This document shows positions 29,610 through 62,577 of a stretch of 64,000 nt of DNA, in pieces. Where the stretch lies: IMG/VR virus record IMGVR_UViG_3300026521_000471, positions 160,468-224,467 of that record. The stretch is one strand, 5' to 3'. The position numbers and the translations under genes are program-made. The notes beneath the pieces are model-generated. The model ran no database searches. It had not been told where the DNA came from and saw only the letters and a list, made by a program, of their open reading frames with translations. How positions within the stretch are numbered: position 1 is the first letter of the stretch; every line of letters begins with the position of its first letter.

Positions 29610-29840
29610 TTACCAATATAACTCAGTAACTCTCTTTGCTATTTTGAATTGTTCCTCATATGGTAAGTTTGAAAACTCTGCCGCCAATTCTTCATCACCA
29701 CCGTGGATACTAACATAATCTAATGAAGCATCTGCTAACATTTCCGTTGTTAAATTCTCACCATTGATAGCTGCCACCTCTTCCATATCACATGCAATTG
29801 TTTGAATTGTATTTGATAATAAACTTTGGTACTTACTCAT
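29610..29840 (-). CDS. small acidic early protein
   Basis: Promoter cassette upstream. Confidence 0.65.
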   Translation of the reverse strand: MSKYQSLLSNTIQTIACDMEEVAAINGENLTTEMLADASLDYVSIHGGDEELAAEFSNLPYEEQFKIAKRVTELYW

Positions 29841-29886
29841 TATATCTCCCTTTGATTAATTATAGTATATTATACCATAATTTTAA

Positions 29887-30465
29887 TTAGTTGTCAAGAG
29901 TTTCTAAGTATTTAGACATCTCTTTGAATTTATCTTCATAATCCATATATGTATATTCCACGAATAAAACAATTTCGGCAAAACTATCTAAAATTTCTTG
30001 TACATCTTTCATATCGAGACCTAAAAGTGCATATGGTGAATGTTTGTGAGCGATAATGTTTCTAAGCTTGTTAAACATTTGTAATAAATGTTTATCATTA
30101 TTTGGAATATCTAAGAGATTCAATAATTGAGACATTGTTAAATCTGATCTTTTTACTATTTTGAAATCATTAGCATCACATGCATATCTCATTAGTAAAA
30201 TAGTAGTAAGTTTAGTATGAGTATTTAATACTAAATCATTAGCTATTAATATATCATAAGTTGCTTTATCAATTTTTCTAAGTATTGATTTTGGGGTATT
30301 TGGAGTTTGTGGCATCATTATATATTTAAAATTTTTTATTCCAGAACGAACACACGTACTAAAATCTCCTGTAAAAATAGCTATATCTAAAGGCATTGAT
30401 ACACTATAAGATTTTATTCTTTCAATTAGTAAAAGTTGTTCCATACTATTCAATCTTTTTAACAT
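29887..30465 (-). CDS. hypothetical protein with RNxxxH (HEPN-like) motif
   Basis: LRNIIAH matches HEPN Rx4H; nothing else recognised. Confidence 0.5.
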   Translation of the reverse strand: MLKRLNSMEQLLLIERIKSYSVSMPLDIAIFTGDFSTCVRSGIKNFKYIMMPQTPNTPKSILRKIDKATYDILIANDLVLNTHTKLTTILLMRYACDANDFKIVKRSDLTMSQLLNLLDIPNNDKHLLQMFNKLRNIIAHKHSPYALLGLDMKDVQEILDSFAEIVLFVEYTYMDYEDKFKEMSKYLETLDN

Positions 30466-30511
30466 TGTTTACCCCTTTGATTAATTATACCTATATTATA
30501 ACATATTATAG

Positions 30512-31276
30512 TTAATATGTCAATAGTTCCGGTTCTCTTTTTGCAATTTTCAATAATACTAATAGTGTATAATAACTATCATTACCCCCATTATGTAAAT
30601 GAATTGGTTTTACCCCTATAATACTCTCTACTAAAGTTTTTAAATTGTGGGTCTTATTTTCTAATAGATATAATGGTGCAAATCGTTGAGTATCCAATAC
30701 TGCTATATTATCAATATCAATATCACAACTGTATAAAAATGGTTTATCATTACCAAAAGCATGTCCTACTAAAAAGTCTGTACCTTTGAAAAGTACTCCA
30801 ACTATTACTTGTATTGCTTCTAATGGTAATATTTGAGATTCTCCATAATCGAAGTGGAATTTATTATCTGGTACAAATCGACCATTTTTAAATTGTTTAG
30901 TTTCTAATACTATAAAATGATATGCTTGGATTTTTTCATCTTCAAAAATAGTAATACCTACTTCTGTAAGTTGTCTTGTTGTTTCGTGGAATTCTAAATC
31001 CATAGAAAATAATTTTTTACCTTGGATTTTTTCATTTAATTCTGATAACACTTCTGGGGCAGAACTAACTTTTTGTTCCCATTTGAGTTGATTTTTGATT
31101 CTTCTTTTTAACCGTTTGATAGGTTTATTATATTTTGCAAATTTTCTTAGTAATAATTTATCTTCTGGAGTATAAAGAGTATAATCAATAGTATGTAAAT
31201 ATTCGATTTTATTTTGTTCTTCTGGAGTGATATTTGATTGAAGTTCTTCTTCTAAAATTGTTAATTGAGTTTTCAT
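30512..31276 (-). CDS. DEDDh 3'-5' exonuclease-like protein
   Basis: SMDLEF, LVGHAFGND, LDTQ, LHNGGNDSYYT. Confidence 0.8.
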   Translation of the reverse strand: MKTQLTILEEELQSNITPEEQNKIEYLHTIDYTLYTPEDKLLLRKFAKYNKPIKRLKRRIKNQLKWEQKVSSAPEVLSELNEKIQGKKLFSMDLEFHETTRQLTEVGITIFEDEKIQAYHFIVLETKQFKNGRFVPDNKFHFDYGESQILPLEAIQVIVGVLFKGTDFLVGHAFGNDKPFLYSCDIDIDNIAVLDTQRFAPLYLLENKTHNLKTLVESIIGVKPIHLHNGGNDSYYTLLVLLKIAKREPELLTY

Positions 31277-31335
31277 TATATCCCTTTGATTAATTATAAT
31301 ATATTATACCATAAAAAGGGAAATAATACAAGCTT

Positions 31336-31914
31336 TTATATCCTCTCACAAGGATTTTTAGCTTTTAATTTTGTTAGTTTTTTATCTACTGTTTTAATGA
31401 GTTGTCTAGGATGAATATACCCTTTTGATCTCTCTGCTATAAATGAAGCTCCTTGTAACGAGCTAAGATCTTCTTTTACTTGTTTAAATGATTTGACAGT
31501 ATCTCTTACAATAATTGCAAATTCATCGCCACCAATTCTATATACTTGGTCAATAGAGAATTTTTTTCTAAGTTGCTCTGCTACTGATATAATTAGATTA
31601 TCTCCTGCTTCCATACCTTCTATTTTATTAATATTATGAAGGTTATTAATATCAATCAATACAAATGTAAATTGAGCATCTGTAAATTCATGTTCTTCAA
31701 ATACTCTATCTAATTTATCATTGAAATCTTGTTTACCCATAAGACCTGTCATTGAATCAAATTTATATTTTTTAACTAATCTTTCTAGGTATGTAATACG
31801 CTCTAAATAAAAACCAATTGCCTCACATGATTGAGGTTGGCCACATGGTGTATCTAAAGAAACTTCTCCATCTTTTGAAGAGAAAATGATTTTGTCCTTT
31901 TTTTGAGTTTTCAT
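31336..31914 (-). CDS. GGDEF-domain diguanylate cyclase
   Basis: DSMTGL, IDINNLHNINKIEGMEAGD, YRIGGDEFAI. Confidence 0.85.
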   Translation of the reverse strand: MKTQKKDKIIFSSKDGEVSLDTPCGQPQSCEAIGFYLERITYLERLVKKYKFDSMTGLMGKQDFNDKLDRVFEEHEFTDAQFTFVLIDINNLHNINKIEGMEAGDNLIISVAEQLRKKFSIDQVYRIGGDEFAIIVRDTVKSFKQVKEDLSSLQGASFIAERSKGYIHPRQLIKTVDKKLTKLKAKNPCERI

Positions 31915-32071
31915 AAATGTCCTTTTATTTAATGTTACCTATATTATAACATATTTTGCATTAAAAGTCAAGAGTTTTGGGGTAAATTTTGCAGAAAAAA
32001 ATGAGAGGGGAAGAACCCTCTCTAATTATGGCGATGGAAGAGATAATCTCTTCACATTTATATTATACAAT

Positions 32072-32986
32072 TTATGCATTTGTTAAAATGTATTTCGCTG
32101 CATCCTTCCACATTGGATTACCACTATATGAAAATGCTACTTTGATAAGTTTTTCAAATGTTCTCATATTGAGTTCTTTTGCTTCAAATTTATGTTCATC
32201 GATAAACTCTAGCACTTCTTCTTTTAGTGATAAATCATAATCCGGCAAAATATGAGTTACAATAGCTTTCATTCTATCGATACGATCTTGGATACTCATT
32301 GTAACATCAACTGCAAGTGTTCTACCTCTTACAGCTTTATCAATTTTCGGTAAAGAGATATTTGAGATAAAAATCACTTGACCTTCAAAATCAAATGAAC
32401 TTGGTAAACCATCATCAATAAAACCTTTTGATAACCAACTAATAGTTCTCTTTGCATATGAGTCCAGAGCACCTTTTAGAATGTTAAGTGATACAGGATC
32501 TTTCAATACACTATCACAATCATCAAAGATAACCACTTTATCTTTATTTTCATAAAGAGTTGCATACAATGCTTTTGGTGTTGCATAACCTTTGATAATA
32601 ACATAATCAGCATCTTCTTCAAGATTATTTTTATCAAGGATTTCAAGAACGGTATGAGATTTCCCTAAACCACTTTGTCCGCAGATAAGTAGTGAACTTG
32701 TAATGTTTGATAATGTCATATTTACAAATTGATCAAGGAAAGCAAAACGCTCATTAATATCAAATTCTGATTGTGCTTCTGTAAGTGGTGTAAGTGGTGT
32801 TTGAGAATTTGATTGAACTGCTTTATCCAATACAGTAATTGTTCTTGTTTCGATACTAGGTTTACAAATATGTCCACCTAAACTAAATGTACCATCTGCT
32901 TTGAGTTTACGAGTATGGACTTTTGCTCCTGTGTTTATTGTAAATTGAACTTCGTTTTGTGAATGATCTACATAATTTAATACCAT
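32072..32986 (-). CDS. AAA-type ATPase
   Basis: GQSGLGKS, VIFDDCD, NILKGALD, IFISN. Confidence 0.8.
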   Translation of the reverse strand: MVLNYVDHSQNEVQFTINTGAKVHTRKLKADGTFSLGGHICKPSIETRTITVLDKAVQSNSQTPLTPLTEAQSEFDINERFAFLDQFVNMTLSNITSSLLICGQSGLGKSHTVLEILDKNNLEEDADYVIIKGYATPKALYATLYENKDKVVIFDDCDSVLKDPVSLNILKGALDSYAKRTISWLSKGFIDDGLPSSFDFEGQVIFISNISLPKIDKAVRGRTLAVDVTMSIQDRIDRMKAIVTHILPDYDLSLKEEVLEFIDEHKFEAKELNMRTFEKLIKVAFSYSGNPMWKDAAKYILTNA

Positions 32987-33049
32987 TGTTAGTATTCCTT
33001 TTCTTTAATTATGCCATATTATAACATAACTTGACTAAAAAGTCAAGTT

Positions 33050-33508
33050 TTACGCTAATTCTTCTTCAAAAAGAAGCTCATAAATCAATGCGCTAGTAAG
33101 AGATTTACCGTTTACAGTAATTCGGATATTAATGTTTTGCACATACAACATAAGTTCGTTTCGTTTCCATGCTGCAATTTCTTCCTCTGTTGGTTCGCAG
33201 TTATCAACATTTACAAATTTATTTGTCCATAAGAATTCATCATCTGCATATGTTCTCAATTCATCTTTTAATGAGTCTAAATCAAAATCTACTAACACCT
33301 CTTTTTCAAAGTACTCTTCTAGATTTACAAGCAGTTCTTCTCTTAGATTTTCTGGTTCTACATGCCATAACATTTTCTCATTAGACCAATGATTTACATG
33401 ATCTAATTCACCTTCCAAATAATCATCTTGAAATACATCTACAAATGAAGAAATCTCTACTGTAAAAGTATCACTCACTAAATTTCTAATTTTTTGAATA
33501 GTTTCCAT
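33050..33508 (-). CDS. acidic hypothetical protein
   Basis: 152-aa ORF. Confidence 0.6.
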   Translation of the reverse strand: METIQKIRNLVSDTFTVEISSFVDVFQDDYLEGELDHVNHWSNEKMLWHVEPENLREELLVNLEEYFEKEVLVDFDLDSLKDELRTYADDEFLWTNKFVNVDNCEPTEEEIAAWKRNELMLYVQNINIRITVNGKSLTSALIYELLFEEELA

Positions 33509-33713
33509 TTTTATTCCCCCACTTTATTTTTTAACTCTTTGATTTTTGGTAAAACTTCTGATATATTTTGAGCTCCAACTTCCAACATAACCTGCATAAT
33601 AATATCCGATAATTTAACAGTTGCTTCAGACCATTGATTTTCTAATTTTTTATTTGACATTGTTTACACCTTTTATTTAAATTACTATATTATACTATAT
33701 TTTTAGAAATAAA

Positions 33714-34265
33714 TCAAGCCGTTTCATACTCTTTTTGAGATAAAACCTCTTTACATTTATTACAGCGATAAGTAGCTGTGCCTCTTAGGATTTTATTATG
33801 TCTCACAGTAGATAAGTTATGAGTATCACAAGCACAATAATAAGTATGAGTGTTTTTTCTTTTTGATTCTAAAATTGTACTACCAGAAAATAGTGATGTT
33901 GAAGCTTTACCACTTATACCAAAATGTGAACAAACCGCCTTAAACTCTTTACCATGTGGCATAACTCTCTTATACCCATTTCGACCTGTTGGGTATAAGT
34001 TTCTAACAACAGCATGGGCAAATTCATGAATCACTACCGCTGTTATATAAGTATCACCAAACTCTAAAAGTAACTCTTTGTTTAATTCAATGTAATTAAT
34101 TGTTTCACCGTATGCAGACGATTGATAAAATTGACCTAATGCTCTAACACTTTTTAATGTATAAACCACATCATAATCAAATTCTACATCCCATTCTTTT
34201 TTAGCATATTTAGCCAATTCATCTAGTTTCTTATCAACTTTTGTAGAGAGAGTTTTGAAATCCAT
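33714..34265 (-). CDS. SprT-like zinc metalloprotease
   Basis: HEFAH, PHGKEFK, YYCAC, RHNKI, YRCNKC. Confidence 0.88.
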   Translation of the reverse strand: MDFKTLSTKVDKKLDELAKYAKKEWDVEFDYDVVYTLKSVRALGQFYQSSAYGETINYIELNKELLLEFGDTYITAVVIHEFAHAVVRNLYPTGRNGYKRVMPHGKEFKAVCSHFGISGKASTSLFSGSTILESKRKNTHTYYCACDTHNLSTVRHNKILRGTATYRCNKCKEVLSQKEYETA

Positions 34266-34572
34266 CTTTTACACCTTTTCTTTAATTATGCCATATTATA
34301 CCATAAAAATAAAAAAATATCAAATTAAAAACATGATTTCTTTGTCTGTTAGTGGACGTCCTAATTGCTTGATAGTTTGTTCAATTAATAACTTATGAAA
34401 TTTTTTATCGATCTCTTCTTTTGTTAATCTTTTATCTTTACAGCTTTTAGACATTTTATTACCTTTATAATTAGATTTAAAGATGAGGACTACTATCGAT
34501 AAACATAAAATCATCTATCCCCCCATGATAAACAAAGTAAGTATTTTAAATCCTCACCTTCAAATCTAATAG

Positions 34573-34830
34573 TTAAACTATTAGAAATGGTTGTGCATAA
34601 GTTCCATTAGAAATTCTTTTATAACTTAGGTCGGTTTCAAAAGCTCTAATTTCATATGTATCATCATCTGTAAGCACCAATCTTACAGATGATTCCTTAC
34701 CATAGACTTCCTCAGTTTCTGAATCAACCATACGAATTTTACTATCTATGGTTAATACTCTACCGTTAATATCTTTGATTTTTAAAGCAATCATTTTAAT
34801 TATCCTCTTGCTCTTCACCAGTTTCATCAC
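34573..34830 (-). CDS. hypothetical protein
   Basis: Real start probably near 34794. Confidence 0.5.
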   Translation of the reverse strand: MMKLVKSKRIIKMIALKIKDINGRVLTIDSKIRMVDSETEEVYGKESSVRLVLTDDDTYEIRAFETDLSYKRISNGTYAQPFLIV

Positions 34831-35317
34831 TTACAACTACCACACCTTCACCATAAGTACTTTCAACAACCATTTTAATTGGTGCCATATCAGGCATTAC
34901 AACTGGATAATCCTTTGGATAGTGTTCAAGTTTAGAGATAAGATCAGCAACTGTAATAACTGATGGGATATGTTCTTGTATAAATTCTTTTAGCTCTTCT
35001 TGAAAATCTTCAAGTACACCTACTTCTCTCAAATCTGTTTCAAGCTGAAAATCATAATCGGTATTATTGATATTAATTTCGCTCTCAAGCACAGTAACAA
35101 TCATATCTTGAATAGTACCATAGATTAGTTCTTCTTCACCAACATTAACACTATCGATAAATATTTGGAGTGAATTCATATTAATAGTAATTCCTTCATC
35201 CATTTGATACTCAACCATTGCTTCAAAAGTACAGCCAATTTTATGACCATCTATTACACCTTCGATTTTATCACCTACCATAATACCATATGTTTGATAC
35301 ATAACTTCTGCATTCAT
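34796..35317 (-). CDS. acidic hypothetical protein
   Basis: AAGG RBS. Confidence 0.6.
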   Translation of the reverse strand: MNAEVMYQTYGIMVGDKIEGVIDGHKIGCTFEAMVEYQMDEGITINMNSLQIFIDSVNVGEEELIYGTIQDMIVTVLESEININNTDYDFQLETDLREVGVLEDFQEELKEFIQEHIPSVITVADLISKLEHYPKDYPVVMPDMAPIKMVVESTYGEGVVVVSDETGEEQEDN

Positions 35318-35320
35318 TTT

Positions 35321-35524
35321 TTATACCTTTGCTGTTTCTTTTTGAGCTATCTCTTTAATAACTCTTAGATAACCATTTAGATTCAATAACATAAGCTCTT
35401 TGAGAGTGATTAGTCTCTCTCCTCTATTAAGTATAAGTTCTTCACCTTTTAGGAACTGTTGAGATGGTATTTCTACCAAATCATTAGCTTCATTTACTTT
35501 AACTAAAATATCTAAATGACTCAT
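35321..35524 (-). CDS. hypothetical protein
   Basis: AAGG RBS. Confidence 0.55.
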   Translation of the reverse strand: MSHLDILVKVNEANDLVEIPSQQFLKGEELILNRGERLITLKELMLLNLNGYLRVIKEIAQKETAKV

Positions 35525-35534
35525 TTTTTATACC

Positions 35535-35963
35535 TTATGCGTGGATGTCTAGTTGTGAAACTGTTTTGTATTCTTCACAACCGAATTTAGATTCTGCAAT
35601 TTTTCTTGCTAGTAATGAACTTGTACTAGCTTCTCTTTGGAATGCTTGTAATAAAACATCATTCTCATTTTTTAGTTCTTTAATACGCTCTTCTTGCTTT
35701 CTGATAGTTTTTAAATGTTTATCATTTGTCTGCTCATAACTAAAAAGAGCATCATCTTGTGCTTTATATTTCATAAGCTTTTTGATTTCCTCTGATTGCT
35801 TTTTAACAACACCCATTAAAAACTCTGATGACTGTTCTTTTAACTCTTTATTTTCAGCTTTTAGTACTGCTACCTCAGCTAATAAATCGTTATAATCTCT
35901 TTTGATATTTTCCCAATCAGTTTTTGCAATTTTAACATATTTTGAACTAAACATTTTATACAC
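35535..35963 (-). CDS. coiled-coil protein
   Basis: Promoter cassette upstream; start probably at MFSSKY. Confidence 0.6.
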   Translation of the reverse strand: MYKMFSSKYVKIAKTDWENIKRDYNDLLAEVAVLKAENKELKEQSSEFLMGVVKKQSEEIKKLMKYKAQDDALFSYEQTNDKHLKTIRKQEERIKELKNENDVLLQAFQREASTSSLLARKIAESKFGCEEYKTVSQLDIHA

Positions 35964-35995
35964 CTTTTCTTTAATTATGCCATATTATAACATAT

Positions 35996-36298
35996 TTACG
36001 ATCTTTTGTCAACCATTTTAGGTGTTTTACTTGACGAATTGAAAAAATTTCCTTGAGGTGTTTTTTCATAAAATTTAATATATTTGTATCCTTTGCGAGT
36101 AATACGATAAACATTATCAACTACTTCCACCAAACCTTTCTCTCTCATAGCTTGATAGGTCATACCTTTTTTCTCAACCGTTTTAACTTGTTTAGTAGTT
36201 ATCTCTTCACCGTTATTCAACTTTACTAAACTATCCCAGTAGTAAGTAGTACCACTCTTTGTAATAGGTCTTGTTAGGGAATATCGTTCTTTTCTCAT
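35996..36298 (-). CDS. basic protein, possible winged helix
   Basis: KGLVEV..YRITRKG motif. Confidence 0.55.
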   Translation of the reverse strand: MRKERYSLTRPITKSGTTYYWDSLVKLNNGEEITTKQVKTVEKKGMTYQAMREKGLVEVVDNVYRITRKGYKYIKFYEKTPQGNFFNSSSKTPKMVDKRS

Positions 36299-36352
36299 CT
36301 TGTATCCTTTTTATTTAAGTTAGATATATTATATCATAATTTAGTTTTTTTA

Positions 36353-36721
36353 TCAAGCATTTTCGAGGTTTTCTAATCGTTCTTGAAGTTTTTTAATTTC
36401 TTTTTGTAACCGTCTAGTTAGTTTTTTAGCAATTTTTTTATACTCTTTTTCCATATGATTTTGAGCTTCTTCTTTACTATAAAAATATCTATCTTTAACA
36501 GATTCATAATCTTTAATAATCTTACCTGTTTCTACATTTTCTAAGAGAACAGCTTTTGCATATCTACCATCGTAAATACCTTTAAAAATATACTCTGTAA
36601 CCTTCTTAGTTTTAGACGATTTAACAAAGTCCAATCCCGTATCATCCAACTCAAATTCTGTCGGGTAATAAATATGATCACCTTCTACTAGATTCTTCTT
36701 TAATACGATATTAGATTCCAT
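36353..36721 (-). CDS. hypothetical protein
   Basis: AGGAG RBS. Confidence 0.6.
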   Translation of the reverse strand: MESNIVLKKNLVEGDHIYYPTEFELDDTGLDFVKSSKTKKVTEYIFKGIYDGRYAKAVLLENVETGKIIKDYESVKDRYFYSKEEAQNHMEKEYKKIAKKLTRRLQKEIKKLQERLENLENA

Positions 36722-36730
36722 ATTTTTCTC

Positions 36731-37354: not shown

Positions 37355-37370
37355 AATTTTATCCTCTCTA

Positions 37371-38031: not shown

Positions 38032-38108
38032 TTTTGATCCTTTTCTTTAATTATACCATATTATAACATATTCAAAGAAAAAAATCAAGTTATTCTAGGG
38101 AATAACCC

Positions 38109-54511: not shown

Positions 54512-54574
54512 AAAGCTTGACTTTTTAGTCAAGTTATGTTATAATATGGCATAATTAATCAAAAGGATAACAAA

Positions 54575-54850: not shown

Positions 54851-54861
54851 GGATAGAGGTC

Positions 54862-55080
54862 ATGACAATTTTATTAACAGCATACAACCCTAACTTTAGT
54901 GATAAAGTTAAAGCTAATATTAGTGCTAAAGTTGAGCCTACTATGGTTTCAACCCATAGCGATAGTCAATCATTCGATTTGGAAGCTGCAGTAAATATTA
55001 TTACTCATTTTGGAAATGATAATGATCAAGAGATTCTAGAAAATTTGAATCAACAACATGTGGATTATATTGAATTTTAA
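54862..55080 (+). CDS. hypothetical protein
   Basis: RBS present. Confidence 0.55.
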   Translation: MTILLTAYNPNFSDKVKANISAKVEPTMVSTHSDSQSFDLEAAVNIITHFGNDNDQEILENLNQQHVDYIEF

Positions 55081-55150
55081 TTCAAAATACTTGACTTTAT
55101 ACCTAAATTAGGGTATAATATATTATATAAAAAGAAAAGGATAAAAACAA

Positions 55151-55465
55151 ATGCCATTAACAAAAGAAATCAAAATGGGAATTTACACTAAAGGTTCTGG
55201 GATTAGACTTATCGGTGAATTAGATTTAATCACTCAAGATGAAGGCCATAAAGATGAAGCGATTTATTTGGTTACAATGGCCATGATGAGAGACCCGAGA
55301 GAACCAATCGGTGAAAAAGAGATGAAAGAATACGAAAATGCTGTCAAATCTATGTTTAGAGATCATAGACATGATTATAAAGCTAAAGATCGTGCTGAAG
55401 CAGATAAATTCATTGAATATAATATAGGGTCTTGGGAAGAAGTAAGATCTCTATCTAAAATCTAA
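55151..55465 (+). CDS. hypothetical protein
   Basis: Promoter cassette upstream. Confidence 0.6.
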   Translation: MPLTKEIKMGIYTKGSGIRLIGELDLITQDEGHKDEAIYLVTMAMMRDPREPIGEKEMKEYENAVKSMFRDHRHDYKAKDRAEADKFIEYNIGSWEEVRSLSKI

Positions 55466-55552
55466 AACCCTTTGTGGACTTTTTGAGCCGGTAAGTCCCT
55501 TATAAAGAAACATGGCAATTCCTTTGTAAGAAACTCTATACACTATAACACT

Positions 55553-55661
55553 TTGTGGAAAGAGATGGGAACATCTGGTGGAGGGGCTATCTCTTCCACA
55601 ATAGTAAGAATAGTGAAGATGAATTTGGGTGGTGTGCACTTTTTCATCTTCACTATTCTTA
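55553..55661. other. two adjacent long hairpins (candidate structured RNA)
   Basis: 13-bp stem with one bulge (55553-55601); perfect 19-bp stem (55605-55623/55643-55661). Confidence 0.65.
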
Positions 55662-55685
55662 TTGTATAATAAATAGTAGAAAACT

Positions 55686-56708
55686 ATGGAGTTATATATG
55701 CCTCAATCAAAAACAATCAAAATACAAGTTTGGACAGATTTAAATTATTGTAGAGTAATTGGTATATGGTATCCTGAAGAACCAGAAGATGCTATTGATT
55801 TTAATGATGCACCATATCTGTTAGTATTATCTAGTATTTTTGAACCTCGTACTGAAGTTATGGGTAATAATCCTATTGCACCAGGTCAACATCCAATACC
55901 TAAAGATTTTTTAGAAAAACAAATAAGACATATAAGTTATCTTTTTGCAAATGATTTTGGTACTTTTCAACCATATTCAAAAGGGATAGCAAAAACATTT
56001 TTAGCTAAACAAACTGTATCATATAAAAAAGTAAAAGAGTTTGATATGACCGTTACACCTGCATCTGGCTCTATATCATTAAAGGCATTTAGAGATAGTA
56101 TTGACCAATATACAGAAGAAGAACAAGAAGCTATCCAAGTAATGACTATTGGTGAAAATCCTCAAGATGCTCATGCTAAAGATATTGAAGATTTTATACA
56201 TATAGAAAAAAGCGATAACATTGAACAATATATCTCAATAACAAAACTTACCCCAGTTTATGGTATAGATGATCCATATATTGTTAAAACAAGTCTCCCT
56301 GAAGATCCTGCATTTTCATCTCTTCCTCCAGGTACAGAAGATGCAGAAGCATCACAAGAATTTATAGAAACCGTTGAAGCTGCAAAAACAGAAGATACAA
56401 TCAATAGAGAGACTTTAATAACTTATGATACTTTGTCTGAAACACCTCAACCCGTTCTTGATGAAAACGGTGAGCAAGTTCTTAATGAAAACGGTGAACC
56501 TGTTACCGAATTAAGAGAACCAACAAGAGAAGAAGTTTTAGAGGCTTTATTAAAAGATAAAGAGGCTCAAATTGCAGCCCTTCAACCTCAACCAGTAAAG
56601 GAAAAATTACCTCAACCATTATCAGAAGCAGATCTATTCCCAGAGGAAGCTGCAGACCAATTAGAAAGAGAAACCCTCAATACAACATTCACACCAAAAG
56701 AGATGTAA
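55686..56708 (+). CDS. acidic Pro/Glu-rich protein, possibly late/virion-associated
   Basis: AATAAATA and GGAG before ATG 55698; VLDENGEQVLNENGEP repeat. Confidence 0.6.
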   Translation: MELYMPQSKTIKIQVWTDLNYCRVIGIWYPEEPEDAIDFNDAPYLLVLSSIFEPRTEVMGNNPIAPGQHPIPKDFLEKQIRHISYLFANDFGTFQPYSKGIAKTFLAKQTVSYKKVKEFDMTVTPASGSISLKAFRDSIDQYTEEEQEAIQVMTIGENPQDAHAKDIEDFIHIEKSDNIEQYISITKLTPVYGIDDPYIVKTSLPEDPAFSSLPPGTEDAEASQEFIETVEAAKTEDTINRETLITYDTLSETPQPVLDENGEQVLNENGEPVTELREPTREEVLEALLKDKEAQIAALQPQPVKEKLPQPLSEADLFPEEAADQLERETLNTTFTPKEM

Positions 56709-56712
56709 TTTT

Positions 56713-56741
56713 TTGATAATGATTTTAATAATCATTATCAA
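56713..56741. promoter_or_regulatory. Fur-box-like palindrome D
   Basis: ttgataatgattttaataatcattatcaa, exact reverse complement of B. Confidence 0.65.
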
Positions 56742-56824
56742 TTAGCCCCCATTTAAATTAATAAACTTGACTTTTTACCTATTTTATGTTATAATATGGC
56801 ATAATTAAAGAAAAGGTGTAAAAG

Positions 56825-57169
56825 ATGATTATCACAACAAATAATGATATTAAAATCTACCAAATTTTTGAAGATATATATGATGGTATTGATAATTTTA
56901 TGGATATAGAAAGTCGTAATGTTATTGAACTTACAAAAATTATTATTAATAAAAACTCTCAGTTTAAGACACCAATATTTTTAGACAGTTATAGTAAAAG
57001 AATTGATAAATCATTTAAAAGAGAAACTGTGTGGTTTATTAAATGTGATAGTATAGTTTTTGATTGTAAAAGTGAAGAAATTGCAAATGCACTTTTTGAC
57101 AAAATTGCCTTAGTTTTAGAATTTGGCGATGAACCTTTAAAAACTGTCGATGACCTTTTTGTATTTTAG
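56825..57169 (+). CDS. hypothetical protein (C-terminal DDLFVF)
   Basis: Promoter cassette upstream. Confidence 0.6.
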   Translation: MIITTNNDIKIYQIFEDIYDGIDNFMDIESRNVIELTKIIINKNSQFKTPIFLDSYSKRIDKSFKRETVWFIKCDSIVFDCKSEEIANALFDKIALVLEFGDEPLKTVDDLFVF

Positions 57170-57178
57170 GAGTACATT

Positions 57179-57583
57179 ATGAAAATAACAAACAAAAAAT
57201 TACTATCAGAAATAAACAAAGTTCTCCCTTACAGTTGTTCTGCAGCCGAATCTAATAGTACTGATAGAGCTATATATGTTAGATGTAGTTCTTTACAGAC
57301 AAAACAATTAGAGCAATTAAAAACAAAAATCCTAAATCATCTCAAATCTCTACCATATATGGATGAAAGTGTGGATATTATATCTAGAGTTACAATCACT
57401 CAAAAACCTGTTCTAGATGGTTTCTATGTATTTGTATGGGGTAATAAAGAGGATGAAAAAAGTTTTCTAACTGCAAAACTTACTTTAGAAACTGAATCGT
57501 TATTAGATATTAAAAAACAGGAATTAGCATTACGAGAAAAAATGCTTTCTACCGTAGAAGCATTAGCTGCATTAAAGGACTAA
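57179..57583 (+). CDS. hypothetical protein
   Basis: AGGAG RBS. Confidence 0.6.
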   Translation: MKITNKKLLSEINKVLPYSCSAAESNSTDRAIYVRCSSLQTKQLEQLKTKILNHLKSLPYMDESVDIISRVTITQKPVLDGFYVFVWGNKEDEKSFLTAKLTLETESLLDIKKQELALREKMLSTVEALAALKD

Positions 57584-57585
57584 AA

Positions 57586-58140
57586 ATGGATAATTTAATT
57601 TTAAAATCATCTAATAAATTTAAAATCGATGAATTTAAACGCATCATAGGTGATACTCTTATAATTGAAAATGGAGAAGATTTACCTGAAGTTGATGGTA
57701 CTGCTGTTGAGGTTGTAATTTATAAATCAATTGCAGCAGGTAAAAATGTAATTGTCGAAGATACAACACTCACTATTGAAGGTGAAGAGGTAGTCGACAT
57801 CAAATGGAAAATTGAAGAATTGCAAAATAAATATTCACTAGTGCCAGCTATTTGGAAAACTTATCTTGCTTATAATGATGGAGAAGAAATTCGAGTATAT
57901 GAAGGTATAGTCAATGGTGTTATAATTCCAGATAGCAAAGATAAAGGATACGGATTTGATCCTTATTTTTTACCTGATGGAAGTGATCGTACTCTTGCTA
58001 AACTTTTAGATGACGGTGAAAAGGACAAATATAGTGCTAGACAAAAAGCATTGATCAATTTAGTTACTAATCATTTATTTGATAGAATACCAACAAAAAC
58101 AGTCCCTGTTTGGTCAGGAAAATATCAAAATCAAACTTGA
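57586..58140 (+). CDS. Ham1/RdgB-family non-canonical purine NTP pyrophosphatase
   Basis: SSNKFKIDE, DLPEV, VEDT.L, GYGFDPYF, KDKYSAR. Confidence 0.88.
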   Translation: MDNLILKSSNKFKIDEFKRIIGDTLIIENGEDLPEVDGTAVEVVIYKSIAAGKNVIVEDTTLTIEGEEVVDIKWKIEELQNKYSLVPAIWKTYLAYNDGEEIRVYEGIVNGVIIPDSKDKGYGFDPYFLPDGSDRTLAKLLDDGEKDKYSARQKALINLVTNHLFDRIPTKTVPVWSGKYQNQT

Positions 58141-58194
58141 CTTTTTACCTATTTTATGTTATAATATGGCATAATTAAAGAAAAGGTGTAAAAG

Positions 58195-58446
58195 ATGAAA
58201 AAGCTAGTTATATCAGTTGTTACAGATGAAGGTAAAAAATATATCAAAAAAGGATTCTTAGGTTCAAAGACAGTTAGTACAGTTGAACTAGAAGATGCAA
58301 CATTATATTCAAAACCTGATGATGTTGAATGGGTTTTAGCAAATTATGAACTACCTTCTCCAGTTATTGAAGTAGTCGATATTCAAATTTCAAAATCATT
58401 GGAATCTGCAAAAGAAAAATATTTAGCATATGCCGAAATGCTTTAA
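58195..58446 (+). CDS. hypothetical protein
   Basis: Promoter cassette upstream. Confidence 0.6.
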   Translation: MKKLVISVVTDEGKKYIKKGFLGSKTVSTVELEDATLYSKPDDVEWVLANYELPSPVIEVVDIQISKSLESAKEKYLAYAEML

Positions 58447-58456
58447 AGGATAAAAG

Positions 58457-58663
58457 ATGAATTTAGAAGAAAGAATTAATAAAAGAGCAAAAGAGATAGA
58501 AGCCTCATTTCCGATGGATGTTGAAGCTGTTGCAATTGATGTTGAAGAAGATGGCAACAACACTTATGTAAGTTGGATTGTTTTAGATAATAGTATCTAT
58601 GATGTCACACATGCTCAAATTAGAAACTTCGATGAAAAATTAGAAGGGGTAGAAAATGAATAA
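58457..58663 (+). CDS. small acidic protein
   Basis: AAGGA RBS. Confidence 0.55.
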   Translation: MNLEERINKRAKEIEASFPMDVEAVAIDVEEDGNNTYVSWIVLDNSIYDVTHAQIRNFDEKLEGVENE

Positions 58664-58907
58664 TATATCTTCATTACCAGAAGAGGTAGATCATTTCTTA
58701 GCAGACTTAGCACAATATGGTTCAAATCCAGAAATAGACTATAATGATATTATTAATTTTGCAAATGCAAATGATACAGATAGTATTCTATCAATAAAAG
58801 CTCATATTGCAGATATAGCAGAGTTAGATTTTGATTTTGAAGATGATGAAGTAATTATCTCTTTAGATGCAATAGCTTCTTTAGTAAAAAATACTGAAAA
58901 CTCTTGA
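58656..58907 (+). CDS. small acidic protein, paralog of 45248-45496
   Basis: Visible similarity. Confidence 0.65.
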   Translation: MNNISSLPEEVDHFLADLAQYGSNPEIDYNDIINFANANDTDSILSIKAHIADIAELDFDFEDDEVIISLDAIASLVKNTENS

Positions 58908-58961
58908 CTTTTTACTCAAATAATGTTATAATATGGCATAATTAAAGAAAAGGTGTAAAAG

Positions 58962-59192
58962 ATGAAAAGATTCAAAGTGATTAAAGAATCGGAAAACTTT
59001 GGAAGAGAAGTTGTTTATGAAGCAGATAATAGAGAGGATGCAGAAACTTCTCTTATCGATTGTATAGCATGTACAATCTCAAACTTCGATGAGTATAGTT
59101 GTGATGATATTGATGAAATTCAATATCAAGGTTTTGAAGGTTATGGTAATGGAATCATATACATAGAAGATGATGGTATCAAACCATTTTAA
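58962..59192 (+). CDS. small acidic protein
   Basis: Promoter cassette upstream. Confidence 0.6.
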   Translation: MKRFKVIKESENFGREVVYEADNREDAETSLIDCIACTISNFDEYSCDDIDEIQYQGFEGYGNGIIYIEDDGIKPF

Positions 59193-59208
59193 TAAGAAAG
59201 GGTAAAAA

Positions 59209-59523
59209 ATGTTAATTTTTTCTAAACAAGTCTTTGAAGTTGATTTTGAAATTGAAGATACTTCTATTGAAGGAAAATACCAATATTCTACACAAACTGA
59301 CAACTTTGTCGGGTATGAGTATAATACAGAGGTTGAACTAAATTCAGATATTAAAGTTGAATCAGACATTGCAACAACCATCCTCGATAGTGATGATATT
59401 GAAAATATTATCGAGGAAATGGATATTGATTATGCAATGGACGAAATTCTTATCATATCTAAACAGGATATAGCAGATTATATCGGTGCAGATACAATTA
59501 AATCAATTAAAGTACAGGAGTAA
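59209..59523 (+). CDS. small acidic protein
   Basis: AAGGG RBS. Confidence 0.6.
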   Translation: MLIFSKQVFEVDFEIEDTSIEGKYQYSTQTDNFVGYEYNTEVELNSDIKVESDIATTILDSDDIENIIEEMDIDYAMDEILIISKQDIADYIGADTIKSIKVQE

Positions 59524-59526
59524 AAT

Positions 59527-59721
59527 ATGAATCCTAAAGCATTTAACATCATCTTCTGGGGAATTTTCTCAATATCACTCATTTCTATCATAGTACAAAT
59601 GGTAGTAGTAGGGTGGTTAGGTGTAACGGCAGTTAAAGAAGTTCAAGATAACAATGGAAGTGTAGGACAAACTATCGGTAAATTTATCGGTGATGTTCAA
59701 AAAGGCATGAAAAGTAACTAA
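59527..59721 (+). CDS. small membrane protein
   Basis: Hydrophobic helix; AGGAG RBS. Confidence 0.6.
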   Translation: MNPKAFNIIFWGIFSISLISIIVQMVVVGWLGVTAVKEVQDNNGSVGQTIGKFIGDVQKGMKSN

Positions 59722-59784
59722 ATTGCTTGACTTTTTACTCAAATAATGTTATAATATGGCATAATTAAAGAAAAGGTGTAAAAA

Positions 59785-60060
59785 ATGAATATCGAAAGAG
59801 TAGTAAATACAATAGCAAACAATTTAGTTGACCAAGAGGTTTTAAATGAAGCATTAGAGGCTATCGAAAATGATGATATGGATAACCAATCATATTGGCA
59901 AGCAGCAGGCTCAATCGTTGAACCGGAATTAAATTCGGAAGATGAAGAAGAGTATTTTGAAATGTTGGAAAATGATCCTCAAAACTGGATAGGTTTTATC
60001 ACTAGCATCGATGAAAGATTTCTTCCAATTGCTGAAAAAGTTGTAGAGTACGGATATTAA
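59785..60060 (+). CDS. small acidic protein
   Basis: Promoter cassette upstream. Confidence 0.6.
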   Translation: MNIERVVNTIANNLVDQEVLNEALEAIENDDMDNQSYWQAAGSIVEPELNSEDEEEYFEMLENDPQNWIGFITSIDERFLPIAEKVVEYGY

Positions 60061-60061
60061 A

Positions 60062-60277
60062 ATGTTTTCTACAATCTGGAAAAAAATCACAAGTCCCTTA
60101 TACAAAAAAGGGACTGTAAATTTTGGTAATGGTCAAATAGATGCATTACAAAATAAACTAACTAAAAGAGTTATTATCGATCTATCAAATGATACAATGA
60201 ATCAACTCTTCAAAGAAAAAAAATCTTATGATACATTTTATAATGAAGATGGGTATGGAATGGAAGGGATAAAATAA
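60062..60277 (+). CDS. hypothetical protein
   Basis: Coupled in operon. Confidence 0.5.
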   Translation: MFSTIWKKITSPLYKKGTVNFGNGQIDALQNKLTKRVIIDLSNDTMNQLFKEKKSYDTFYNEDGYGMEGIK

Positions 60278-60690
60278 TGTTACCATTACTATTATTTATT
60301 TTAGGTGCTTCGTTAGGTGATACATATACATTAGGCGCAGTTATTGCTAATGGTGCAAATGTAGTTTCGTATCTATATTTATTTTTAATCATTATTGTAG
60401 TCTTTATTGTTGGTCTATCAGGAACTTCATTAGGACTACAAATGTCAAGAGGTTCTTCTTCATTACAATCATTAATGATGGGTATGGCTGGTTCAGGTAT
60501 AGGTGTTTTAACAGGTCTTTGGATTATTCTTAGAACAGTTATTATGTATATACTTTTATACTATATATCAATGACAGACCATTTCATTACAGAGTTCAAT
60601 CAGTTACCTGCTACAACTATTATGGCGATACTATTGTTCTTTATTCTTTACTATACAAGAACTACAAAAGTATCAATTAAAAGATCTTGA
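60277..60690 (+). CDS. multi-TM membrane protein
   Basis: About 4 hydrophobic segments. Confidence 0.6.
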   Translation: MLPLLLFILGASLGDTYTLGAVIANGANVVSYLYLFLIIIVVFIVGLSGTSLGLQMSRGSSSLQSLMMGMAGSGIGVLTGLWIILRTVIMYILLYYISMTDHFITEFNQLPATTIMAILLFFILYYTRTTKVSIKRS

Positions 60691-60748
60691 CTTTATCCCC
60701 TTTTTATGGTATAATAATATATCATAAAAATAAAGGGAGATAATAAAA

Positions 60749-61054
60749 ATGAAAATTCAAAAAATAGAAGCTTACAAAACAACAGATGATAAAATCTTTG
60801 ATAATATAGAAGATGCAGAAGATCATCAATATATCCTAGAACTACCAGCAAATGAAAATCAACATTTATCTAAAAGAGAACAAGAAGTATTTAACTATCT
60901 AACTAAAACCTCTTTAGAAAATAAAGAGATAGCAGAAAAACTTGGTGTTACTCTTACTACTATCAAAGCACATAGCAAAAAAATCTATGAAAAAACAAAT
61001 ACAAAAAATCGTATAGAATTACTTATAAATCTTCAAAAAGAGTTGACTTATTAA
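60749..61054 (+). CDS. LuxR-type HTH regulator
   Basis: LSKREQEVF..NKEIAEKLGVTLTTIKAHSKKIYEK..NRIEL. Confidence 0.88.
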   Translation: MKIQKIEAYKTTDDKIFDNIEDAEDHQYILELPANENQHLSKREQEVFNYLTKTSLENKEIAEKLGVTLTTIKAHSKKIYEKTNTKNRIELLINLQKELTY

Positions 61055-61103
61055 TTATACTATGGTATAATATAGTATATTTAAAGAGAAAAGGATTTAA
61101 AAA

Positions 61104-61775
61104 ATGTTTACATCAACACTAACTCATAACCAACTTATCAAAAGTGGATTAATCATAAATGGTAATTTTAGAGGATCTATCGCATCTAAAGAGTTAATAA
61201 CATTATCAAAAAGAGCAGAATCATATGTTAAAAGTATTATGGGAGAAGATCACTCTTTATCACCATTATATCTATTTGCCGATTCAAAACATAATGGTGA
61301 AATCCTTACTAAGATTTGGAGAGAGTTAGTAATTAATACAGAGTTTGACTCGACGGAAAATGTTGAAAAAATCTCAAGCAGTAAAGCATATAAAATATCT
61401 GTACCGGCATACTTCATTACAGAAGTAGTTATCAAAAAGAAAGGGTATGTTACAAAAGTAAATAATTTCATAAAACGATTTTATACAGCAATAAGTGTTT
61501 ATGAATCTGCTCAAAAAACATTTGAAGAAAGAGAAGGAGTGAGACTAGACTGTTATCCTCCTATACAAAGACAATCAAGTAGAGAACTATATGAATTGGT
61601 GGATGCATATATTACAAAATTGGTCTCACTTATTGAAGAAAAAACATTTGAAAACAAACTCAAAGAGTTTAACTTTGTAGATAGCATTTTAATAGACGGC
61701 AAATACCTTTCTTCAACGGCGGAAGGCAAACTATATTTTGTAGATAAAAAAGAGAAAACTATCGAAAAAGCTTGA
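61104..61775 (+). CDS. hypothetical protein
   Basis: Promoter cassette upstream. Confidence 0.6.
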   Translation: MFTSTLTHNQLIKSGLIINGNFRGSIASKELITLSKRAESYVKSIMGEDHSLSPLYLFADSKHNGEILTKIWRELVINTEFDSTENVEKISSSKAYKISVPAYFITEVVIKKKGYVTKVNNFIKRFYTAISVYESAQKTFEEREGVRLDCYPPIQRQSSRELYELVDAYITKLVSLIEEKTFENKLKEFNFVDSILIDGKYLSSTAEGKLYFVDKKEKTIEKA

Positions 61776-61829
61776 TTAATAAATCAAGCTGTGGTATAAT
61801 ATACTATAATTAATCAAAAGGGTAAAAAA

Positions 61830-62261
61830 ATGAATATCAAAAGTTTAATAGAAACACATAACATAGTTACAGAGAAGGAAATTACTTATAAATTACCTTC
61901 TTATGGTTGTGATGAAAATTTAAAAGTCGATAATAAACCACAATCATTAGAAAGTGATAGAGTTTTTGAAATTCTTTTTAGTTTTGGTGGAGGTATGGGT
62001 GGTGCAAATAACACTCATTTTGGTTCTGATTTATCAGTAGAGGACGACTGTATTGTTTATAGAAATATACTTACAAATGAAAAAATCACACTTTATAAAA
62101 GATGGATAGTTTCTATTGTTGAGAAGGATTTACACCTATTCAAATTTTCGGATAAAGTATTAGCTCTCTATACATTACCAGTTGATACTAATCCGAATCA
62201 AATTAAATGGATACAATTCAACAGTAATAGACCTGATGAAAATTGCATCTATAAATTCTGA
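61830..62261 (+). CDS. hypothetical protein
   Basis: Promoter cassette upstream. Confidence 0.6.
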   Translation: MNIKSLIETHNIVTEKEITYKLPSYGCDENLKVDNKPQSLESDRVFEILFSFGGGMGGANNTHFGSDLSVEDDCIVYRNILTNEKITLYKRWIVSIVEKDLHLFKFSDKVLALYTLPVDTNPNQIKWIQFNSNRPDENCIYKF

Positions 62262-62577
62262 TATAGATGCTTGATTTATTTACTTTTTTATGTTATAATA
62301 TAGGTAACAAAAGGGAAGAGAAAGAGGAAGAAAAATTTCCCTAAGAAAAAATAAAAATCCCTTATTTTAAAGGGGTTTTGGAGGGGTAGAATGATATTTC
62401 TTGGATATGGGTAAAAAAGTAACAAAATTTTTGAATAAATCGAATTTTTTTGTTAGTTTAATAAGACTTTAAGGGAAGGTATGTTAAGTGTTAAAATGGT
62501 TTTTTTGCTTAAGGAGTGTTTAAGGTGTCATATCTGCCCGTGAAACCATAGGAATTAAGATTTTTACTTCCAAAAAC

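What the first reader, a model, noticed from the sequence alone, without database searches (positions are those of the whole stretch)
29610..62300. Bidirectional array of promoter-delimited gene cassettes (best candidate for an undescribed system)
Seen: about 30 copies of one ~60-bp module, CTTGACTTTTTA-N-TGTTATAATATGGCATAATTAAAGAAAAGGTGTAAAAGATG and variants. Each gives -35, extended -10, start site and RBS to 1-4 small genes. All copies at 29.8-47.4 kb point left and all at 49.7-62.3 kb point right; two are identical over 66 bp. Cargo is typical host-takeover or anti-defence material (acidic microproteins, SprT, nucleases, ATPases, GGDEF, sigma-like, LuxR). Known analogy: PeSL mobile promoter cassettes of T4-type phages. 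Inference: an integrase-free, integron-like platform in which recombination between repeats excises, duplicates and shuffles self-expressing cassettes.
Basis: partly seen in the sequence, partly recalled or inferred. Interest (0 to 1): 0.85.

Follow-up and report, generated by a model that had tools for sequence, protein, structure and literature searches.

The report
Repeated early-promoter cassettes in a jumbo phage
A 33-kb stretch of an uncultured 224-kb phage carries about 30 copies of one strong promoter-plus-ribosome-site unit that switches on its early genes; these copies also recombine with each other, much as already described for T4-type phages.

Summary
A profile finds 29 significant and 2 weak copies of a ~60-65-bp unit. 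It consists of -35 TTGACT, a 17-bp spacer, an extended -10, a fixed ~20-nt leader and a Shine-Dalgarno site, with 26-33 nt between the -10 and the start codon. All copies lie between 29.8 and 62.3 kb: 16 point left and 13 point right. None lies in 1-29.6 kb.

The segment is the early region of an uncultured AT-rich jumbo phage. Its genes include rIIA, rIIB, a sigma-like protein, a LuxR-type regulator, Sir2, GGDEF, SprT, an exonuclease, ATPases and many acidic small proteins.

A sister genome (~88% nt identity) is collinear, with every unit in place, but has nine indels or replacements. In 6-8 of 27 orthologous units the -35/spacer patch matches a paralogue in the same genome rather than the orthologue, which indicates short-patch gene conversion. 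One cargo swap has both crossovers in the -10 core. More distant relatives carry the same unit with cassette order permuted next to a collinear backbone.

No integrase, no attC-like sites and no general stem-loop are present. This is a variant of the PeSL-type early-promoter cassettes of T4-like phages, not an integron-like system. Interest is moderate.

The parts
29610..47446 (-). Left arm of the early region: about 33 genes transcribed leftward, led by 16 promoter units
49704..62322 (+). Right arm of the early region: about 24 genes transcribed rightward, led by 13 promoter units
29840..29901 (-). promoter-leader unit, precedes a 76-aa acidic protein
   Evidence: (E 1e-9)
30468..30523 (-). 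promoter-leader unit, precedes a 192-aa protein
31277..31326 (-). promoter-leader unit (-35 TTGTAT), precedes the DEDDh exonuclease
31919..31975 (-). promoter-leader unit, precedes the GGDEF protein; terminator-like hairpin just upstream at 32003-32022
32991..33050 (-). promoter-leader unit with a hairpin across the -35; precedes a 304-aa ATPase-like protein
33663..33721 (-). promoter-leader unit, precedes 49-aa and 152-aa genes; the 49-aa gene is absent from the sister, with a crossover at the -10
34267..34323 (-). promoter-leader unit, precedes the SprT-like protein
35955..36014 (-). promoter-leader unit, precedes five small genes
36302..36359 (-). weaker promoter-leader unit, precedes a 100-aa protein; the window-only 122-aa gene abuts its upstream edge
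38031..38091 (-). promoter-leader unit overlapped by a 15-bp-stem terminator (38087-38120); precedes 69-, 155-, 207- and 122-aa genes
40235..40296 (-). promoter-leader unit, precedes rIIA (38109-40235)
42047..42103 (-). promoter-leader unit, precedes 42-, 77- and 93-aa genes and the 362-aa AAA ATPase
43162..43217 (-). promoter-leader unit with a divergent leader, precedes 80-, 148- and 111-aa genes
45808..45864 (-). promoter-leader unit; its spacer is 13/13 identical to units 56764 and 58134 but 5/13 to its orthologue (converted)
46616..46672 (-). promoter-leader unit; its spacer is identical to units 58900 and 59724 but not to its orthologue (converted)
47398..47446 (-). weaker promoter-leader unit, precedes 71- and 88-aa genes
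49704..49762 (+). promoter-leader unit, precedes Sir2; the deletion that removed a Rep3 gene ends exactly at its -35
53148..53205 (+). promoter-leader unit after the terminator at 53101-53126; precedes the sigma-like 286-aa protein
54061..54120 (+). promoter-leader unit, precedes a 129-aa acidic protein
54513..54574 (+). promoter-leader unit with a hairpin across the -35; precedes the DUF8033 protein
55088..55145 (+). promoter-leader unit, precedes 104-aa and 340-aa genes
56764..56823 (+). promoter-leader unit, identical over 66 bp to the unit at 58134
58134..58193 (+). promoter-leader unit, precedes the 83-aa gene; this unit and gene are replaced in the sister by a different cassette set
58900..58960 (+). 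promoter-leader unit; -35/spacer patch replaced relative to its orthologue
59724..59784 (+). promoter-leader unit; spacer replaced relative to its orthologue
60684..60742 (+). promoter-leader unit, precedes the GerE/LuxR-type regulator
61040..61095 (+). promoter-leader unit; left crossover of the cargo swap lies just after its -10
61768..61828 (+). promoter-leader unit with a 9-bp hairpin across the -35; lies inside the window-only cargo
62268..62322 (+). last promoter unit, with no ORF downstream; right crossover of the cargo swap lies just before its -10
42873..42899 (-). marginal unit copy (E 0.6)
51903..51946 (+). marginal unit copy (E 0.011) in front of rIIB
49467..49703 (.). central divergence region between the arms, with two palindromic operator-like sites and a 25-codon remnant of a Rep3 gene (49620-49694)
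43518..44678 (+). Rep3-type initiator, antisense to the left arm, with 22-bp iterons upstream (about 43304-43410)
50612..51832 (-). second Rep3-type initiator, antisense to the right arm
51950..53074 (+). rIIB homologue
   Evidence: E 1e-80
38109..40235 (-). rIIA homologue (GHKL-type N-terminal domain)

Best explanation
The segment is the early (host-takeover, hyperplastic) region of an uncultured AT-rich jumbo phage of about 224 kb. Its roughly 58 genes sit in two divergent arms. Some 29-31 copies of one expression unit head groups of 1-5 genes. The unit consists of an A-rich upstream stretch, -35 TTGACT, a 17-bp spacer, an extended -10 (TRTGNTATAAT), a fixed ~20-nt A-rich leader and an AAAGG SD about 7 nt before the ATG.

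Inferred: the host's primary-sigma RNA polymerase fires all units right after infection, with little termination between them. This gives a burst of small acidic proteins, rIIA/rIIB, nucleic-acid enzymes, a phage sigma-like factor and a LuxR-type regulator, which presumably set up the next phase.

Shown: the -10/leader core is the longest identical DNA shared within the genome and between diverged relatives, and it acts as a substrate for general homologous recombination. The evidence is short gene-conversion patches between units, cargo replacement with crossovers in the -10 core, and permuted cassette order in distant relatives.

Recombination is most likely a by-product of promoter repetition that makes this region plastic, as with PeSLs of T4-type phages. 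It is not a dedicated site-specific system.
For: Promoter geometry and enrichment. Restriction to 29.8-62.3 kb, including the rest of the 224-kb contig for exact copies. Early-gene cargo (rIIA, rIIB, sigma-like, GerE, Sir2, GGDEF, SprT, DEDDh, Ham1, NUDIX, acidic small proteins). The sister genome is collinear at 86-90% identity with all units in place and nine indels or replacements. Gene conversion: in 6 of 27 orthologous units a paralogue in the same genome is closer than the orthologue, and in 8 of 27 this holds for the 13-nt spacer. Six spacers differ from the orthologue at 5-8 of 13 sites, where about 0.5 such cases are expected, although the flanks are about 95% identical. The cargo swap 223aa-P-143aa against 517aa has both crossovers at the -10 core. 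The same unit occurs in relatives with only 50-56% rIIA identity. There 10 of 16 cassette adjacencies are broken against 0 of about 6 in the adjacent backbone. The longest exact matches between the window and L139 are in the units (33, 32 and 27 nt, against at most 22 nt in array genes).
Against: No transcription data and no known host, so promoter activity and early timing are inferred from sequence. Breakpoints fall in units no more often than expected for intergenic DNA (4 of 9 against 53% expected, p=0.81), so selection for intact genes could explain their placement. Several events are unrelated to the units: the Rep3 tandem, the TnpB insertion and a 130-bp intragenic deletion. No clean two-units-to-one deletion was seen. 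Five other assemblies of the same phage show one fixed order.
Confidence: 0.75

Rival explanations
1. The repeats are only strong promoters kept alike by selection for strength. Their similarity is convergent or ancestral, and they play no part in recombination or genome plasticity.
For: Near-consensus hexamers, 17-bp spacing, a TG extension and a fixed SD distance are what selection for strength would give. Gene order is fixed between the closest genomes and across samples. Breakpoints are not enriched in units over the intergenic background.
Against: Spacer sequences, which are weakly constrained, match paralogues at 13/13 but orthologues at only 5-8/13, while the flanks are about 95% identical. 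Each genome has its own variant shared by several paralogues: GGTGTAAAAGATG against GGTGTATAAGATG. The -35 form is lineage-specific: TTGACT here, TTGACA in L139 and L140.
Confidence: 0.12
2. A dedicated integron-like platform without an integrase: a specific factor recognises the repeat and excises, duplicates and reinserts self-expressing cassettes, for example through mini-circles.
For: Cassettes carry their own promoter. Cargo is replaced between retained units. Cassette order is permuted in distant relatives. Mini-circles are documented for PeSLs in phi1 and RB49 (PMC2839356).
Against: No tyrosine or serine recombinase hit in any array protein of at least 180 aa. There is no attC-like folded repeat. 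There are almost no duplicated cassettes: only three weak paralogue pairs. Unique cargo has no second copy in the other genome. The order is stable in all assemblies of the same phage.
Confidence: 0.06
3. The conserved stretch downstream of the -10 (ATGGCATAATTAAAGAAAAGG) is a regulatory target. It could be an operator or an RNA leader bound or cut by a phage factor that shuts off or tunes all early genes at once, as RegB, RegA or stoperator-type control does. This would account for its conservation and is compatible with the main explanation.
For: The leader is conserved at 0.6-1.3 bits per position beyond the SD. It is retained almost unchanged in L139, whose rIIA is only 56% identical. The array encodes a sigma-like protein and a GerE-type DNA binder.
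Against: No binding protein or nuclease was identified. The leader has no convincing dyad symmetry or structure. Leader variants exist in about a third of the units. Inter-phage recombination could also spread it.
Confidence: 0.25

Closest known systems
PeSL (promoter-early stem-loop) cassettes of T4-type phages (Arbiol et al. 2010, PMC2839356; Comeau et al. 2014, PMC4122927)
   Same: A repeated ~60-100-bp unit with a consensus sigma70-type early promoter, SD and start codon. It is concentrated in a plastic region full of small orphan genes. Indels and replacements between close relatives lie next to the units. Homologous recombination between units is the proposed driver.
   Different: A stem-loop or terminator is not a general component here (9 of 29 units, the same as control windows). 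The leader between the -10 and the SD is itself conserved. All units sit in one 33-kb block of two divergent arms rather than in several hyperplastic regions. The phage has no close relative among sequenced phages. Short-patch conversion of the spacer is documented here; mini-circles are not.
[quoted passage not shown]
   Same: A dense cluster of small early genes in short operons, each with a strong primary-sigma promoter and a strong RBS. A phage sigma factor is made early to redirect transcription; that last point is from my own knowledge of SPO1 gp28.
   Different: No sequence relationship was detected. This region is about 33 kb with ~58 genes, against 12.4 kb with 26 genes. It also holds rIIA/rIIB and Rep3-iteron replicons. 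Whether it lies in a terminal redundancy is unknown.
Integrons
   Same: An array of short gene cassettes separated by a repeated sequence, with variable cargo.
   Different: No integrase, no attI or attC sites, and no common Pc promoter. The repeat is a promoter, and the exchange looks like general homologous recombination.

Membership tests
PeSL cassettes | Consensus sigma70-type -35 and -10 early promoter | tested here: met
   26 sites with at least 11 of 12 matches and a 17-bp spacer, nearly all with a TG extension
PeSL cassettes | [quoted passage not shown] | tested here: inconclusive
   Upstream consensus is A-rich, but information content is only 0.1-0.7 bits against a 72% AT background
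PeSL cassettes | Stem-loop acting as terminator or attenuator within or next to the promoter | tested here: not met
   9 of 29 units fold at or below -10 kcal/mol against 24% of control windows; Mann-Whitney p=0.77. Clear composites occur only at 38031-38120, 32003-32022, 53101-53126 and 62245-62270, with hairpins over the -35 at four units
PeSL cassettes | SD and start codon at the 3' end of the unit | tested here: met
   26-33 nt from the -10 to the start codon in 26 of 28 units; AAAGG SD
PeSL cassettes | Concentrated in a plastic region upstream of orphan genes | tested here: met
   All copies lie in 29.8-62.3 kb. Most cargo has no family hit. The array is rearranged against a collinear backbone
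PeSL cassettes | Indels or replacements between close relatives associated with the units | tested here: inconclusive
   5 of 9 events have a breakpoint in or within 5 nt of a unit, and one swap has both crossovers in the -10 core. There is no enrichment over intergenic DNA
PeSL cassettes | Mini-circles formed by recombination between neighbouring units | not testable with these tools
   Needs raw reads or inverse PCR
PeSL cassettes | Host genome is a T4-type myovirus | not tested
   rIIA, rIIB and a T4-type RNA ligase domain are present. No structural or replication core genes were examined, and there is no near DNA match to any sequenced phage
Integron | Integron integrase (tyrosine recombinase) next to the array | tested here: not met
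   No recombinase family hit in any array protein of at least 180 aa. Five proteins remain without any hit
Integron | attC sites: imperfect inverted repeats that fold as single strands | tested here: not met
   The repeat has no general hairpin
Integron | Promoterless cassettes read from one common promoter | tested here: not met
   Every cassette group has its own promoter unit
SPO1-type host-takeover module | Cluster of small early genes with strong primary-sigma promoters and strong RBS | tested here: met
   description of the family in PMC6873191
SPO1-type host-takeover module | Located in the terminal redundancy of the genome | not testable with these tools
   The window is the last 64 kb of a metagenomic contig; the physical ends are unknown

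The most novel reading that the evidence does not exclude
The unit is a clade-wide portable adaptor for both expression and exchange. Its 30-nt -10/leader core is kept identical across phages that share only 50-60% protein identity, because co-infecting phages swap self-expressing cassettes through it, possibly as mini-circles. A phage-encoded factor (an annealase, or a leader-binding regulator) may act on this core specifically.
Probability: 0.2. Interest if true: 0.65.

Novelty: new variant of a known kind. Interest (0 to 1): 0.4.

Why it matters
It extends the PeSL idea, that repeated early promoters double as recombination hot spots reshaping the accessory early genes, from T4-type phages of Gram-negative hosts to an unrelated, uncultured AT-rich jumbo-phage clade. 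It also adds direct sequence evidence for short-patch gene conversion between promoters. The region is a ready catalogue of about 58 early genes, many of them small acidic proteins likely to act on host targets. Each has a compact, portable, very strong promoter-leader unit that could serve as an expression part. It does not reveal a new class of genetic system.

Tried and rejected
- A degenerate promoter pattern in IMG/VR hit over 120 unrelated contigs and was useless for finding relatives.
- The exact 30-mer of the unit is absent from 185,579 reference genomes, so it gave no host clue.
- Host identification through the sister's TnpB failed; the only hit was a 28%-identical archaeal MAG. The NadE atlas search gave only viral clusters.
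- The central 673-aa protein has no hit in Pfam, PHROGs, PDB, phage records or the atlas.
- IMG/VR relatives of rIIA (L125-L131) have 36-55% GC and no units.
- I tested whether stem-loops are a general part of the unit. They are not.
- I tested whether breakpoints prefer units over other intergenic DNA. They do not.
- I looked for inverted repeats joining the two outer boundaries of the array and found none.
- I looked for structural variants in other assemblies of the same phage and found none, apart from one 46-bp repeat copy.
- No terminal inverted repeats or target duplications around the units were seen by eye. This was not formally tested.


Full report
**Origin of the window.** An exact 30-mer of the repeat occurs in IMG/VR only in contig IMGVR_UViG_3300026521_000471, which is 224,467 bp long. 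Mapping the rIIA-like gene places the window at the last 64 kb of that contig. GC content is 25-33%. There is no near DNA match to any sequenced phage. NadE-like proteins cluster with viral proteins.

Upstream of the finding (1-29 kb) lie RNA-repair and nucleotide genes: Pnkp/Hen1, an RNA ligase, Ro60/TROVE, a Thg1-like protein, NadE, a radical-SAM protein and the small subunit of ribonucleotide reductase. A tmRNA gene is also there.

- The strict pattern TTGACW-N14-20-TATAATA gives 20 hits against 0.32 expected.
- A scan for at least 11 of 12 consensus positions gives 26 true sites. All have a 17-bp spacer and nearly all have a TG extension. All lie between 29.9 and 62.3 kb.
- A 65-column profile finds 29 significant copies: 16 on the minus strand at 29.8-47.4 kb and 13 on the plus strand at 49.7-62.3 kb. 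It also finds two marginal copies, and nothing significant in 1-29.6 kb.
- Every exact copy in the whole 224-kb contig maps inside this block.
- Two copies are identical over exactly 66 bp.

**Anatomy of the unit.** The consensus is an A-rich stretch, C-TTGACT, a 17-bp spacer ending in TATG, then TATAAT, then ATGGCATAATTAAAGAAAAGG, a few bases and ATG. Conservation continues through the leader, not only through the hexamers. The -10 lies 26-33 nt from the start codon in 26 of 28 units. The implied 5' UTR is therefore only about 20 nt and consists of little more than the SD.

Each unit heads 1-5 genes. Terminator-like hairpins between cassettes are few. I therefore infer that transcripts read through and add up along each arm.

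**Cargo.** Family searches support:
- rIIA (38109-40235; thousands of homologues, T4-like annotated hits) and rIIB (51950-53074; E 1e-80);
- a sigma-factor-like protein (53208-54068) and a GerE/LuxR regulator (60749-61054);
- Sir2, GGDEF, SprT, a DEDDh exonuclease, Ham1, NUDIX and three AAA-type ATPases;
- many proteins of 40-150 aa with pI 4.1-4.7.

Two Rep3-type initiators lie antisense to the arms, one with clear 22-bp iterons. Only three weak paralogue pairs exist among the roughly 58 proteins. The near-identity of the units therefore stops at the start codons. This is the profile of a phage early or host-takeover region.

**Sister genome.** The rIIA search found a 90%-identical protein on a 221.5-kb contig. 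Walking along that genome gave the whole array (L133, L135/L136, L137/L138).

The two genomes are collinear at 86-90% nucleotide identity, and every unit is in the corresponding place. Nine differences were found:
1. A 49-aa gene present only in the window. One junction is at the -10 of its unit and the other at the RBS of the next gene.
2. A 122-aa gene present only in the window, abutting the upstream edge of a -35.
3. An extra Rep3 plus a 189-aa gene in tandem in the sister.
4. A third Rep3 in the centre of the sister. The window keeps a 25-codon remnant of it, and the deletion ends at the -35 of the Sir2 unit.
5. An extra 232-aa gene in the sister.
6. An IS605-type TnpB in the sister.
7. 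P-83aa in the window against 76aa-P-113aa-P in the sister.
8. A 130-bp deletion inside a 64-aa gene.
9. 223aa-P-143aa in the window against a 517-aa gene in the sister.

In event 9 the left junction lies just after TATAATATA of the upstream unit and the right junction just before TTATGTTATAAT of the downstream unit. Both crossovers therefore map to the most conserved core. Unique cargo has no homologue elsewhere in the other genome. These events are gain, loss or replacement, not relocation.

**Do breakpoints prefer the units?** Six of 17 breakpoints lie in or within 5 nt of a unit, against 6.6% expected for the whole array (p=6e-4). However, units fill 53% of the intergenic DNA, and 4 of 9 intergenic breakpoints fall in units (p=0.81). 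Breakpoint position alone therefore cannot separate unit-mediated recombination from plain selection for intact genes.

**Direct evidence that the units recombine.** I compared 27 orthologous unit pairs.
- In 6 pairs a paralogue in the same genome is closer than the orthologue over the core.
- In 8 pairs this holds for the 13-nt spacer.
- Six spacers differ from their orthologue at 5-8 of 13 sites. About 0.5 cases with five or more differences are expected at 13% divergence, and far fewer with more.
- The same spacers match a paralogue at 12-13 of 13 sites, in some cases a paralogue on the other arm in inverted orientation.
- The flanks on both sides remain about 95% identical, so the replaced patch is confined to roughly -40 to -12 or to the unit as a whole.
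- Several paralogues share a genome-specific leader variant: GGTGTAAAAGATG in the window and GGTGTATAAGATG in the sister.

This is concerted evolution by short-patch gene conversion. Selection for promoter strength does not explain it.

**More distant relatives.** Contigs carrying rIIA at 56% and 50% identity (L139, L140) hold 10-11 copies of the same kind of unit, with -35 TTGACA. In L139 the -10/leader core is essentially the same. The longest exact matches between L139 and the window are in the units: 33, 32 and 27 nt. That compares with at most 22 nt in array genes and 26 nt in the well-conserved backbone.

In both relatives all cassettes point one way, from rIIB to rIIA. In the window and the sister the rIIB side is inverted, which requires at least one inversion. 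Ten of 16 adjacencies among shared array genes are broken, while about six backbone genes (28.4 to 23.2 kb) are perfectly collinear. Two short contigs at 72-79% nucleotide identity show the L139-type order.

Eight of ten broken junctions have a unit directly upstream in at least one genome, against three of six conserved junctions. I counted these by hand. The numbers are too small for significance.

**Stability in the short term.** Five other assemblies of the same phage, from different samples, have the same gene order. The only difference seen is one copy of a 46-bp tandem repeat. Rearrangement is therefore an evolutionary-scale process, not a frequent one.

**Comparison with known systems.** The closest described system is the PeSL of T4-type phages. 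PeSLs are repeated sigma70 early promoters with an AT-rich upstream region, a stem-loop terminator, an SD and a start codon. They are concentrated in hyperplastic regions, and recombination between them gives indels, swaps and mini-circles (PMC2839356 and PMC4122927).

Here the promoter, the SD, the location and the association with variable cargo are all met. The stem-loop is not a general feature: 9 of 29 units fold at or below -10 kcal/mol against 24% of control windows (p=0.77). Only a few true terminator-promoter composites exist. The conserved leader, the single block with two arms, and the phage lineage also differ.

The SPO1 host-takeover module is a functional analogue (PMC6873191). 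Integron membership fails on all three defining features that I tested.

**Verdict.** It overreaches in calling this an integron-like platform. I rate it a new variant of a known kind, of moderate interest.

Noticed in passing
window 20970-21351 (-): A full-length tmRNA gene (Rfam 115 bits; tag peptide ANTKLYIPQTARVAA) lies between the RNA ligase and the Ro60/TROVE gene of the phage.
   Followed up: partly
window 5122-23169: An RNA repair and quality-control cluster: Hen1 methyltransferase, an 896-aa Pnkp-type kinase/phosphatase/ligase, a Thg1-like protein, a T4 Rnl1-type ligase domain and Ro60/TROVE with vWA. NadE and a radical-SAM protein are nearby. No Y RNA was found at Rfam gathering score.
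   Followed up: partly
window 43304-44678, 50612-51832, 49620-49694; sister L135 235-3512, 8463-9656, 10847-12028: Plasmid-type Rep3 initiators, one with 22-bp iterons, lie antisense inside the early arrays. Their number varies: 2 in the window and at least 4 in the sister. The window keeps a 25-codon remnant of a deleted central copy. The cumulative GC-skew minimum (about 50-52 kb) falls at the divergence point. This may mark one or more phage replication origins.
   Followed up: partly
window 46672-46719, 49512-49559, 49593-49629, 56714-56750: Four copies of a ~30-bp palindrome resembling a Fur box (TTGATAATGATT...AATCATTATCAA), each followed by CAATTAG and a run of five C or G. Each lies upstream of a promoter or in the central region, and the motif is conserved in the sister. 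It may be an operator for a host or phage repressor.
   Followed up: no
window 62268-62720: The last promoter unit has no ORF. It is followed by a GA-rich ~75-nt stretch ending in a small hairpin (62359-62374), then by about 185 nt (62392-62575) that is ~96% identical to the sister against ~88% background, then by a 46-bp tandem repeat (62578-62695) whose copy number differs in another assembly (L154). It could be a small RNA or a cis-acting site.
   Followed up: partly
window 29355-29610: The non-coding block at the outer end of the left arm is ~94% conserved with the sister, while the neighbouring 300 bp is ~65% identical. On the minus strand it holds six copies of GTGTTTTTTG, several of them in the loops of short hairpins. 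It may be a termination zone or a protein-binding array.
   Followed up: partly
sister L137 6706-7893 (window equivalent 55501-55654): An IS605-family TnpB (395 aa) is inserted in the sister's right arm. The JGI assembly of the sister breaks exactly there.
   Followed up: partly
window 45248-45496 (-) and 58656-58907 (+): A pair of acidic ~82-aa paralogues (36% identity) sits on opposite arms. A sister-only 76-aa protein is 30% identical to the product of window 54862-55080.
   Followed up: no
window 49.7-62.3 kb versus L139 and L140: In relatives with 50-56% rIIA identity the rIIB-side and rIIA-side cassettes are on one strand. Here the rIIB side is inverted, which implies an old inversion with end points near 49.5 kb and 62.3-62.7 kb.
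   Followed up: partly
window 3076-3194: A 60-bp tandem duplication (2 copies, 98% identical) lies inside the ORF at 3054-3347, which encodes an acidic repeat.
   Followed up: no
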